DNA from: Octopus sinensis
Lineage: Eukaryota
DNA: 64,000 bases
Reading direction: 5' to 3'
Assembly: GCF_006345805.1 (NCBI RefSeq)
Contig: NC_043010.1
Span: 12,152,001 to 12,216,000, forward strand
Every line of letters starts with the position of its first letter. Position 1 is the first letter of the stretch. The translations under genes were made by a program, and so were the position numbers. The notes under the pieces are model-generated. The model was not told the origin of the DNA. It did not search any database and saw only the letters and a list, made by a program, of their open reading frames with translations. Below are positions 45,287 through 45,977 of the stretch, one piece after another.

Positions 45287-45977
45287 CTGGTAAAATCCAC
45301 CGGATAATTGCAGCTTCGAATGCATCTTTATTTTCATGTTCAATGGGTACAAGGAAACATTTGTCGGTGCCACGTTCGATTCCACCAAAAACACGAAATC
45401 CTTTCAAATGCCTTTTATTGGATTTAGATCTGGAAAATGTAGTTATGTCTATTTCAACAACTTTCGGTTCACCTGTCTGTAAATCGAAGCCGCCTATCTC
45501 AGGTGCGTCATCTATTTCGGTGGGGTGGTCTTCCAGGAACCGTTCTAGTAGTTCTCGGATGAGCCTGAACAGGTCAATGCTTGATGTCGTGCAGATGTCT
45601 GTTTCAAAGGTGATTTCATTATGCAGGTAATTTCTCGACCACATGTACATGAACCATAGGAACGTTGTCAAGGAGAGGTGACTGTTTTCGAAAAAGGACC
45701 CTTTGCGGACAGATCGAACGAAGTTATGCTTCCGGCAGCTCCATCGTTTGCCGTCGCCTCCGCTGTTGCGAGTGACGAACGAACAAGGGTTACTACAAGT
45801 GGGACACAGGAAAGAATTGCTTATAAGCTTGTATTTAGCTAACCACATCATCGCTGTATCTTTCGTGGAGGTCTGTTGGAAGAGATCGGAGAACGTCCAG
45901 GTCTCTTGCCTAATTTCTTCATCGTCTATGATGTCCGTACTTATCATTTTGCGGCTGGGTTGCTTAGGGCGAGACAT
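45287..45977 (-). CDS. Merlin-derived gene B, exon 1 (691 nt; joins 41747-41452; 328 aa total)
   Basis: ATG at 45977 (MSRPK...) aligns with the A and C starts. Same motifs; donor CAG|GTATGA at 45287. Confidence 0.9.

What the first reader, a model, noticed from the sequence alone, without database searches (positions are those of the whole stretch)
45287..45580. Purifying selection: 98 identical amino acids in genes B and C despite about 13 silent substitutions
Seen: from IDLFRLIRE to ILPG, B (45287-45580) and C (53178-53471) encode identical protein. My hand alignment finds about 13 nucleotide differences, all synonymous (e.g. CGG/CGA, GAT GCA/GAC GCG, CCC/CCT, GTT GTT/GTC GTC, TTC/TTT, CAC/CAT). 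A neutrally decaying transposon copy would accumulate mostly non-synonymous changes. Inference: the catalytic-domain fold is maintained for a host function.
Basis: partly seen in the sequence, partly recalled or inferred. Interest (0 to 1): 0.82.

Follow-up and report, generated by a model that had tools for sequence, protein, structure and literature searches.

The report
Octopus transposase-derived gene trio under selection
Three neighbouring octopus genes descended from a bacterial-type "jumping gene" enzyme have stayed intact in the same place for about 34 million years under strong protein-level selection, and the perfect 98-residue match between two of them also owes much to the copies overwriting each other (gene conversion).

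Summary
With coordinates shifted by 2 nt (45285-45578 vs 53176-53469, minus strand), B and C encode 98 identical residues with 13 differences. All 13 are third-position synonymous transitions (P about 8e-7).

The window is Octopus sinensis. A, B and C are three tandem two-exon genes (328-329 aa) of the ISXO2-like/IS1595 (Merlin-related) DDE transposase family.

- The C-B-A array lies at the orthologous position in O. vulgaris and O. bimaculoides (split about 34 My ago), and all nine genes are intact.
- Orthologue dN/dS is 0.05-0.18.
- No terminal inverted repeats were found, and paralogue homology is confined to the coding exons.
- A phase-1 intron is shared, also by a distant paralogue on another chromosome.
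- A decayed fourth copy between B and A shows what neutral decay looks like.
- The family-invariant catalytic Glu is Asp in A and C and Asn/Ser in B.

One caveat. The perfect identity is specific to O. sinensis: the same 98 codons differ at 5 residues in O. vulgaris and 13 in O. bimaculoides. It reflects short-tract B-to-C gene conversion, shown by incongruent trees and a runs test (P about 2e-4). B versus C therefore does not measure divergence since duplication.

The protein's function is unknown. This is a new member of a known kind.

The parts
45285..45578 (-). The finding in B: codons 134-231 (IDLFRLIRE...ILPG). The last two bases (45285-45286) are the GT of the splice donor.
53176..53469 (-). 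The matching stretch in C: the same 98 residues with 13 silent transitions.
45287..45977 (-). Gene B coding exon 1 (codons 1-230 plus the first base of Gly231). The B protein is XP_029645244.1, LOC115219239 isoform X3.
41452..41747 (-). Gene B coding exon 2 with its stop codon. AATAAA overlaps the stop.
53178..53868 (-). Gene C coding exon 1 (LOC115218985, XP_029644884.1).
50848..51143 (-). Gene C coding exon 2 with its stop codon. AATAAA overlaps the stop.
29187..29877 (-). Gene A coding exon 1. NCBI annotates it as LOC115219239 isoform X1. The protein is identical to O. vulgaris CAI9732498.1.
20477..20775 (-). Gene A coding exon 2 with its stop codon. AATAAA overlaps the stop.
53273..53337 (-). 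Older B-to-C conversion tract in C (codons 178-199), 65 nt identical to B 45382-45446. It is shared with O. vulgaris C and absent from O. bimaculoides C.
53357..53409 (-). A 53-nt run in C identical to B 45466-45518 (codons 154-171). It contains the O. sinensis-only B-like states at codons 155-161 (TEIDDAP), where O. vulgaris C keeps the ancestral/A-like KELDDPP.
37923..38033 (-). Pseudogene remnant of a fourth copy (end of exon 1 plus the start of the intron) with two in-frame stops. The orthologous remnant in O. vulgaris is longer (L003 17884-18385) and carries stops, an insertion and a frameshift.

Best explanation
The segment is the 3' part of coding exon 1 of gene B. B lies in a head-to-tail array of three paralogous two-exon genes (C, B, A; minus strand) of Octopus sinensis. 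They encode 328-329-aa proteins descended from an IS1595/Merlin-type (ISXO2-like, PF12762) DDE transposase. These are immobile host genes, not transposon copies. The array has stayed intact at one chromosomal site since before O. bimaculoides split from O. vulgaris/O. sinensis. It has no terminal inverted repeats, shares a phase-1 intron, has a polyadenylation signal overlapping each stop codon, and evolves under strong purifying selection on the protein. Two processes together produce the perfect B-C match. (i) Selection removes replacement changes, most strictly in codons 134-269, the first four strands and helices of the RNase H-like core. (ii) Short-tract interlocus gene conversion, possible because this stretch stays similar at the DNA level, copied B sequence into C. 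This happened once in the sinensis/vulgaris ancestor (about codons 172-199) and again in O. sinensis only (codons 155-161, 195, 271). The 13 silent differences lie between identical runs of 41, 53 and 65 nt. Protein mechanism (inferred, not shown): the protein keeps an N-terminal CxxC...CxxH zinc ribbon, a helical region and the RNase H-like fold with the first two catalytic Asp. The whole octopus clade has changed residues at or next to all three catalytic positions: DE[ST] to D[VI]T, SDGW to SD[IV]W, and Glu274 to Asp, then to Asn/Ser in B. B has no acidic third residue, yet is the most constrained copy. The conserved job is therefore most likely DNA binding or protein assembly on DNA rather than cut-and-paste transposition. 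A and C (DDD) might still cleave DNA.
For: - Identity and structure: B is 100% identical to the O. sinensis protein LOC115219239 X3. All three genes have two exons, CAG|gtatga donors and ttcattacag| acceptors. PF12762 is matched above its cutoff.
- Positional orthology: the same C-B-A order and orientation is found in O. bimaculoides (L002, L004) and O. vulgaris (L003, L005). All nine coding sequences are intact and gapless. The splits are dated about 34 My and 2.5 My (PMC10700109).
- Selection: ML dN/dS is 0.054-0.18 between orthologues. B codons 1-133, sinensis vs bimaculoides, have 43 third-position changes against 2 at positions 1+2. The pseudogene control shows differences spread 19/14/28 over codon positions, against 7/2/24 for functional paralogues.
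- Immobility: colinear homology among A, B and C starts at the ATG and ends about 60 nt after the stop. Introns of 8.4, 3.5 and 2.0 kb are unalignable between paralogues. No inverted repeats lie near the gene ends.
- Intron: a paralogue on another chromosome at about 61% identity to A has the same phase-1 intron, whereas a 38%-identical outgroup is intronless.
- Conversion: the middle-region tree places sinensis and vulgaris C with the B clade (84%), while the flanking regions give clean orthologue clades. A runs test gives P about 2e-4 for B-C in sinensis and vulgaris and 0.26 in bimaculoides. B-C differences fall from 13 aa to 5 aa to 0 aa across bimaculoides, vulgaris and sinensis.
- Active site: in 207 non-octopus domains the counts are D177 169/184, E178 159/184, D237 138/167, E274 139/156 and K281 148/154. 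All 16 octopus-clade domains aligned at position 274 have D, N or S there.
- Fold: the AF2 model has pLDDT 80.8 with a beta-beta-beta-alpha-beta core. Foldseek matches retroviral integrase cores and ISCth4 transposase at E about 1e-4.
Against: - No expression, binding or phenotype data were available; 'host function' rests on evolutionary signatures only.
- Asp at the third catalytic position is compatible with catalysis in other transposase superfamilies (mariner and piggyBac are DDD; own knowledge), so loss of activity in A and C is not shown.
- Gene conversion blurs orthology, so per-branch dN/dS values are approximate.
- Synonymous divergence between orthologues (ML dS 0.26-0.30) exceeds orthologous intron divergence (0.075-0.10). 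Neither selection nor conversion with the sampled copies fully explains this.
- Only three closely related Octopus species were compared.
Confidence: 0.8

Rival explanations
1. A, B and C are copies of an active or recently active Merlin/IS1595-type transposon. The excess of silent changes reflects selection for transposase function during rounds of transposition, not a host function.
For: The proteins match PF12762. Two Merlin families with 11 recent insertions are listed in the O. vulgaris repeat annotation (PMC13282606). The first two catalytic Asp are kept.
Against: - The same three genes, in the same order and orientation, sit at the orthologous site in three species separated by up to about 34 My.
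- dN/dS of 0.05-0.18 applies to branches on which the genes did not move.
- There are no inverted repeats at the gene ends, and paralogue homology starts exactly at the ATG.
- The catalytic Glu is replaced.
Confidence: 0.04
2. The identity comes from gene conversion alone. B and C are homogenised repeatedly and no selection on the protein is needed.
For: Conversion tracts are real. Most sinensis-vs-vulgaris differences in C match a state present in A or B.
Against: - Conversion removes silent and replacement differences alike, so it cannot make 13/13 (16/16) remaining differences silent (P about 8e-7).
- Orthologue comparisons outside the converted stretch also give strong constraint; B codons 1-133 show 43 third-position changes against 2 at positions 1+2.
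- The unconstrained fourth copy in the same array decayed with stops and indels.
Confidence: 0.03
3. The low synonymous divergence of codons 134-269 between paralogues reflects selection on the RNA or DNA itself (splicing enhancers around the exon junction, or double-stranded RNA structure for A-to-I editing as described in coleoids), not conversion.
For: The low-dS stretch straddles the single splice junction. dS between paralogues there is 0.16-0.49, against 0.45 to saturation in codons 1-133. All 16 silent B-C differences are transitions.
Against: - Between orthologues, third positions of this stretch are not slow: 15-19% differ, against 7.5-10% for orthologous introns.
- Silent variants are shared among paralogues within a lineage (codons 147, 174, 204).
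- Tree topology changes between regions. Synonymous constraint does not predict either pattern.
Confidence: 0.06
4. The genes are immobilised but still catalytically active transposase sources. They mobilise non-autonomous elements elsewhere in the genome, so they persist as selfish rather than host-beneficial genes.
For: A and C keep an all-acidic D-D-D triad and the Lys seven residues after the third position. The window is dense in short interspersed repeats.
Against: - B has Asn/Ser at the third position and Arg at +7, yet is the most constrained copy, with omega 0.054.
- An immobile transposase source gains no transmission advantage, so about 34 My of purifying selection on all three copies is hard to explain.
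- The repeats seen around the genes are SINE-like and carry no matching inverted termini near the genes.
Confidence: 0.07

Closest known systems
Merlin / IS1016-IS1595 family DNA transposons (PF12762, ISXO2-like transposase domain)
   Same: The sequence matches above Pfam's threshold. The proteins are about 320-330 aa, like most of the 150 best relatives. The core is RNase H-like, with conserved blocks VVEID, FGGIER.KCFLV, ILPG..I.SD.W and W.R.K.
   Different: No terminal inverted repeats were found and target-site duplications were not looked for. The genes sit at a fixed orthologous locus and carry a phase-1 intron. The catalytic Glu is replaced, and the neighbouring Glu178 and Gly238 are lost. 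Described eukaryotic Merlin and IS1016 elements lack the N-terminal zinc finger (PMC8101967), whereas these proteins have a CxxC...CxxH ribbon.
Merlin-related genes without termini in protists, proposed as domesticated (Stentor, Perkinsus and Symbiodinium in PMC8101967). Papers on ciliate macronuclear genomes (Oxytricha, Blepharisma) also mention DDE_Tnp_IS1595 (not read).
   Same: Both are transposase-derived open reading frames kept intact without terminal repeats or target duplications. Synteny between species was used as the argument for domestication.
   Different: The lineage is different (an animal, Octopus). Here domestication is supported by orthologue dN/dS, an internal pseudogene control, a shared intron and a remodelled active site. 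No paper in the held library mentions such genes in cephalopods.
Other domesticated DDE transposase genes of animals (for example SETMAR, PGBD5, pogo-derived CENP-B and POGZ; own knowledge)
   Same: Immobile, intron-containing host genes that retain a transposase DNA-binding domain and RNase H-like core under purifying selection, often with altered catalytic residues.
   Different: The source superfamily is different. Here the genes form a tandem, concertedly evolving multigene array rather than a single-copy gene, and the function is unknown.
Concerted evolution of tandem paralogues by interlocus gene conversion (classic examples are globin and histone clusters; own knowledge)
   Same: Mosaic similarity, region-dependent tree topology, and lineage-specific silent variants shared by paralogues.
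   Different: Tracts are short (tens of bases) and limited to the best-conserved part of the exons. The introns between them are not homologous.

Membership tests
IS1595/Merlin-type DDE transposase (protein family PF12762) | Significant match to DDE_Tnp_IS1595 above the gathering score | tested here: met
   A scores 49.2 bits, B 32.7 and C 41.5, against a cutoff of 27. A profile search found 17,558 relatives at E<=0.001.
IS1595/Merlin-type DDE transposase (protein family PF12762) | Complete catalytic D-D-E triad with Lys/Arg seven residues after the Glu | tested here: not met
   D177 and D237 are kept. Position 274 is E in 139/156 non-octopus domains, but D in A and C, N in O. vulgaris and O. 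bimaculoides B, and S in O. sinensis B. K281 is kept in A and C and is R in B.
Mobile Merlin/IS1595 element (transposon) | Terminal inverted repeats flanking the transposase gene | tested here: not met
   No inverted repeat lies near the ATG or stop in A or C. The one 47-nt pair around B lies within or next to SINE-like repeat copies. Paralogue homology begins at the ATG.
Mobile Merlin/IS1595 element (transposon) | 8-9-bp target-site duplications | not tested
   Without identifiable element ends there is nothing to test them on.
Mobile Merlin/IS1595 element (transposon) | Copies at different, non-orthologous sites in related genomes | tested here: not met
   The C-B-A array has the same order and orientation in O. 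sinensis, O. vulgaris and O. bimaculoides. Flanking and intronic DNA aligns between orthologues at 90-96% identity.
IS1595 family proper (as opposed to IS1016/Merlin) | N-terminal Zn_Tnp_IS1595 zinc-ribbon domain | tested here: inconclusive
   Pfam gives no hit, even at E<=10. C58, C61 and C81 are invariant, a fourth ligand is present (His84 in A-C, Cys in outgroups), and the model has a beta-ribbon at residues 56-89.
Domesticated (host-co-opted) transposase gene | Orthologues at syntenic positions in species separated by long times | tested here: met
   The splits are dated about 34 My and 2.5 My (PMC10700109).
Domesticated (host-co-opted) transposase gene | Intact reading frames and dN/dS well below 1 between orthologues | tested here: met
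   Nine of nine coding sequences are intact. ML omega is 0.054-0.18.
Domesticated (host-co-opted) transposase gene | Expression and a cellular or organismal function | not testable with these tools
   The only evidence is NCBI gene models with isoforms X1-X3 and AATAAA at each stop.
Concertedly evolving tandem gene family (interlocus gene conversion) | Region-specific phylogenetic incongruence and significant runs of identity between paralogues | tested here: met
   The middle-region tree groups sinensis and vulgaris C with B at 84% bootstrap, while the flanking regions support orthologue clades at 92-100%. The runs test gives P about 2e-4.

The most novel reading that the evidence does not exclude
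The array works as a combinatorial cassette. The shared phase-1 intron and the conversion-maintained identical stretch on both sides of the splice junction (codons 134-269) would let exon 1 of one gene be spliced to exon 2 of the next by read-through transcription. NCBI isoform X2 is exactly B exon 1 plus A exon 2. The locus would then yield a set of chimeric transposase-derived DNA-binding proteins with variable N-terminal (DNA-recognition) and C-terminal parts around a constant core. This would be an octopus-specific host system built from the first Merlin/IS1595-type transposase known to be domesticated in an animal.
Probability: 0.12. Interest if true: 0.6.

Novelty: new member of a known kind. 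Interest (0 to 1): 0.42.

Why it matters
Domesticated transposases are a recurrent source of new DNA-binding and DNA-cutting host proteins. None derived from the Merlin/IS1595 group turned up for animals in the literature I could search. These octopus genes are annotated only as 'uncharacterized'.

The locus gives a clean case in one 35-kb stretch: three constrained copies, one decayed copy as an internal control, a remodelled active site, and ongoing gene conversion.

It also carries a methodological warning. In tandem families, paralogue-vs-paralogue silent/replacement counts mix selection with concerted evolution. Orthologue comparisons are needed before dating or quantifying constraint.

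Tried and rejected
- A Pfam scan of exon 1 alone found nothing. Only the spliced proteins match PF12762.
- The P0002 look-up returned only the O. sinensis locus. O. vulgaris and O. bimaculoides loci were reached through cluster members.
- An apparent intronless stretch upstream of O. bimaculoides B exon 2 was a spurious tblastn extension through stop codons.
- A search for terminal inverted repeats around the intronless outgroup ORF (L007) gave only weak 15-nt candidates. It could not serve as a positive control.
- A Pfam search for the N-terminal zinc-ribbon domain was negative.
- RNA-editing 'hard-wiring' as the cause of the GC3 rise was rejected, because sense-strand T>C changes outnumber A>G (23 vs 10 in B).
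- A regional GC-biased recombination hotspot was rejected, because flanking upstream and intron DNA shows balanced AT>GC and GC>AT changes.
- Synonymous constraint as the cause of low paralogue dS was rejected, because orthologue third positions there evolve faster than introns.
- Literature searches for octopus or animal Merlin/ISXO2 domestication found nothing specific.

Full report
**1. Observation**

Translating the minus strand shows long open frames at 45168-45998 and 53110-53886. The peptide IDLFRLIRE...RWILPG (98 aa) is encoded identically at 45285-45578 and 53176-53469. There are exactly 13 nucleotide differences, all at third positions, all synonymous and all transitions. Only 34% of possible transitions in this stretch are synonymous, so 13 of 13 has P = 8e-7.

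**2. What the sequences are**

- The B exon-1 protein is 100% identical to Octopus sinensis LOC115219239 isoform X3, so the window is O. sinensis. One search places A's locus, which overlaps the window, on CM016872.1 at about 12.16-12.19 Mb.
- tblastn finds three copies, all on the minus strand, each with two coding exons and a phase-1 intron after ILP|G. The donor is CAG|gtatga and the acceptor ttcattacag|GC.
- Coordinates: A is 29187-29877 plus 20477-20775 (329 aa). B is 45287-45977 plus 41452-41747 (328 aa). C is 53178-53868 plus 50848-51143 (328 aa).
- All three are intact. AATAAA overlaps the stop codon in each.
- The spliced proteins match PF12762 (ISXO2-like/IS1595 DDE transposase domain) above its cutoff.
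- An AlphaFold model of A has pLDDT 80.8. It shows N-terminal helices, a beta-ribbon at residues 56-89 bearing C58, C61, C81 and H84, a helical region at 103-150, and an RNase H-like beta-beta-beta-alpha-beta-(alpha)-beta-alpha core from residue 173.
- Foldseek matches retroviral integrase cores and the ISCth4 transposase at E about 1e-4.

**3. Transposon copies or host genes?**

- Within the window, colinear homology among A, B and C is confined to the two coding exons. It starts exactly at the ATG, ends about 50-65 nt after the stop, and reaches only 10-35 nt into the intron at the splice sites.
- The introns (8.4, 3.5 and 2.0 kb) and the flanks share only interspersed repeats.
- No inverted repeats lie near the gene ends.
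- The cluster look-up shows that each of A, B and C has a counterpart in O. vulgaris and O. bimaculoides encoded by consecutive genes.
- The fetched loci show the same C-B-A order and orientation in both species. All nine coding sequences are intact, gapless and have the same intron.
- O. bimaculoides split from the vulgaris/sinensis clade about 34 My ago, and O. sinensis from O. vulgaris about 2.5 My ago (PMC10700109).
- Trees of codons 1-133 and 272-328 give three orthologue clades at 92-100% bootstrap. The triplication therefore predates the 34-My split, and the copies have not moved since.
- A family member on another chromosome at about 61% identity to A has the same phase-1 intron. A 38%-identical outgroup ORF is intronless.

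**4. Selection**

- Between orthologues (O. sinensis vs O. bimaculoides), ML dN/dS is 0.07 for A, 0.054 for B and 0.18 for C. On the short sinensis-vulgaris branches it is 0, 0.05 and 0.15. NG86, LWL85 and YN00 agree.
- The most striking case is B codons 1-133: 43 third-position changes against 2 at positions 1+2.
- An internal control exists. Between B and A lies the remnant of a fourth copy, at window 37923-38033 and, in longer form, at O. vulgaris L003 17884-18385. It has stops, an insertion and a frameshift, and its differences are spread 19/14/28 over codon positions. Functional paralogues show 7/2/24.

**5. Why B and C are perfectly identical here**

- Synonymous divergence is very uneven along the gene. 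For B vs C, dS is saturated in codons 1-133, 0.22 in codons 134-271 and 1.3 in codons 272-328. The A-B and A-C pairs show the same dip.
- In the middle stretch, paralogue dS (0.16-0.49) is no larger than orthologue dS (0.25-0.37).
- The middle-region tree places sinensis and vulgaris C with the B clade at 84% bootstrap.
- Site patterns show B-type states in codons about 177-197 of sinensis and vulgaris C that O. bimaculoides C lacks. Further B-type states at codons 155-161, 195 and 271 occur in O. sinensis C only, where O. vulgaris C keeps the ancestral or A-like states.
- A runs test on variable sites gives P about 2e-4 for B-C in sinensis (codons 178-197) and vulgaris (172-194), but 0.26 in bimaculoides.
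- In the window, the 13 silent differences separate perfectly identical runs of 41, 53 and 65 nt.
- The perfect identity is thus the joint product of purifying selection and short-tract B-to-C gene conversion. It extends across the splice junction to codon 269, giving 136 aa with 16 silent differences.
- Conversion cannot by itself make all remaining differences silent, so the inference of selection stands. The 13 differences do not, however, measure time since duplication.
- Constraint on synonymous sites is not the cause. Orthologue third positions in this stretch differ by 15-19%, more than orthologous introns at 7.5-10%.

**6. Active site and likely mode of action**

- A profile search found 17,558 relatives.
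- Among 207 non-octopus domains from the best hits, the conserved positions are D177 (169/184), E178 (159/184), D237 (138/167), E274 (139/156) and K281 (148/154). This is a D-D-E triad with Lys at +7.
- Every octopus-clade protein (61% or more identical to A) instead has D-[V/I]-T, SD[I/V]W, and Asp at position 274. The three B orthologues have Asn, Asn and Ser there, with Arg at 281. The nearest relatives outside the clade (51% identity or less) are canonical.
- B lacks a third acidic residue, yet is the most constrained copy.
- I infer that the maintained function is not cut-and-paste transposition. More likely it is DNA binding or assembly on DNA through the zinc ribbon, helical region and RNase H-like core. 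Residual nuclease activity is possible for A and C. This step is inference; nothing here tests expression or activity.

**7. Comparison with what is known**

- The proteins belong to the PF12762 family by sequence, but they fail the tests for a mobile Merlin/IS1595 element (termini, mobility, complete triad).
- They also differ from described eukaryotic Merlin and IS1016 elements, which lack an N-terminal zinc finger (PMC8101967).
- Merlin-related genes without termini have been proposed as domesticated in protists (Stentor, Perkinsus, Symbiodinium). Papers on ciliate macronuclear genomes also mention the domain (not read).
- I found no report for cephalopods or other animals in the held library.
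- The O. vulgaris repeat annotation lists only 11 recent Merlin insertions.
- This is a new member of a known kind (a domesticated transposase gene family), with concerted evolution as an added feature.

**8. Unexplained residue**

- In the sinensis/vulgaris lineage, codons 1-133 of A and B show a strongly AT-to-GC-biased burst of silent changes: 35 vs 2 in B and 34 vs 6 in A. GC3 rises from 0.35-0.41 to about 0.59.
- The burst is confined to the exon. The upstream 400 nt and the first 400 nt of the intron are balanced.
- Overall orthologue dS (0.26-0.30 by ML) is about three times the intron divergence.
- All ten fourfold-site B-C differences in the middle stretch are transitions, against 63% transitions in introns (P about 0.01).
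- GC-biased repair during interparalogue conversion, or selection on codon usage, are possible causes. Neither was established.

**Verdict**

Interest is moderate.

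Noticed in passing
window 45579-45977 (B codons 1-133) and 29479-29877 (A codons 1-133); orthologues in L002 and L004: There is an exon-confined burst of silent AT-to-GC changes in the O. sinensis/O. vulgaris lineage. Against O. bimaculoides, AT>GC vs GC>AT is 35 vs 2 in B and 34 vs 6 in A, and GC3 rises from 0.35-0.41 to about 0.59. Flanking upstream and intron DNA is balanced. The cause is unknown, and the direction rests on parsimony with paralogues as outgroups.
   Followed up: partly
A, B and C coding exons vs their introns (window, L002-L005): Synonymous divergence between orthologues (ML dS 0.26-0.30, sinensis vs bimaculoides) is about three times the divergence of orthologous introns (0.075-0.10). 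Most sinensis-vs-vulgaris differences in C match a state present in A or B, which suggests that conversion rather than point mutation supplies many of the 'substitutions'.
   Followed up: partly
window 37923-38033 (-); O. vulgaris L003 17884-18385: A decayed fourth family copy lies between B and A. Two stops remain in the O. sinensis remnant. The longer O. vulgaris remnant has several stops, an insertion of about 100 nt and a frameshift. It keeps similarity into the start of B's intron, so it arose by DNA-level duplication. No trace was detected in the O. bimaculoides B-A spacer.
   Followed up: partly
genes B and A (window 20477-45977): NCBI merges A and B into one locus (LOC115219239). Its isoform X2 is exactly B exon 1 spliced to A exon 2, a read-through chimera made possible by the shared phase-1 intron. 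Whether transcripts support it could not be checked.
   Followed up: partly
window 20477-20482, 41449-41454, 50845-50850 (around the stop codons): A canonical AATAAA polyadenylation signal overlaps the stop codon in all three genes (GAATAAAAT in A, TAATAAATT in B and C). This implies very short 3' UTRs and explains why paralogue homology ends about 60 nt after the stop.
   Followed up: yes
window 45285-45578 vs 53176-53469, and exon 2 codons 232-269: All 16 silent B-C differences are transitions. All 10 of those at fourfold-degenerate sites are transitions, against 63% transitions in orthologous introns (P about 0.01).
   Followed up: partly
window 12082-15170 (+): A non-LTR retrotransposon (LINE) is inserted downstream of gene A. 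A 619-aa ORF carries AP-endonuclease and reverse-transcriptase Pfam domains, followed by a second 251-aa ORF. The local GC content is 0.47 in a window that is otherwise about 0.38.
   Followed up: partly
window, e.g. 5905-6327, 22353-22759, 35300-35701, 40833-41245, 46510-46933, 47788-48174; and 2768-2995, 33591-33796, 38645-38866, 52877-53104: Two abundant interspersed repeat families, about 400 nt and about 220 nt (SINE-like), occur in both orientations with more than 20 and more than 10 copies at 80-96% identity. They fill the introns and spacers of the gene array.
   Followed up: no
window 359-1423; 6619-7197 and 60566-60649; 2964-3392: There are tandem-repeat or satellite blocks (359-1423; 6619-7197, related to 60566-60649) and a low-complexity His/Pro/Gln-rich ORF (2964-3392). 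None was examined.
   Followed up: no
proteins P0033 (1611 aa) and P0034 (1750 aa): The two best profile hits outside the window carry 14 and 11 separate matches to the family profile. They may be gene models that fuse tandem arrays of family members in some other genome. The source organism is unknown.
   Followed up: no
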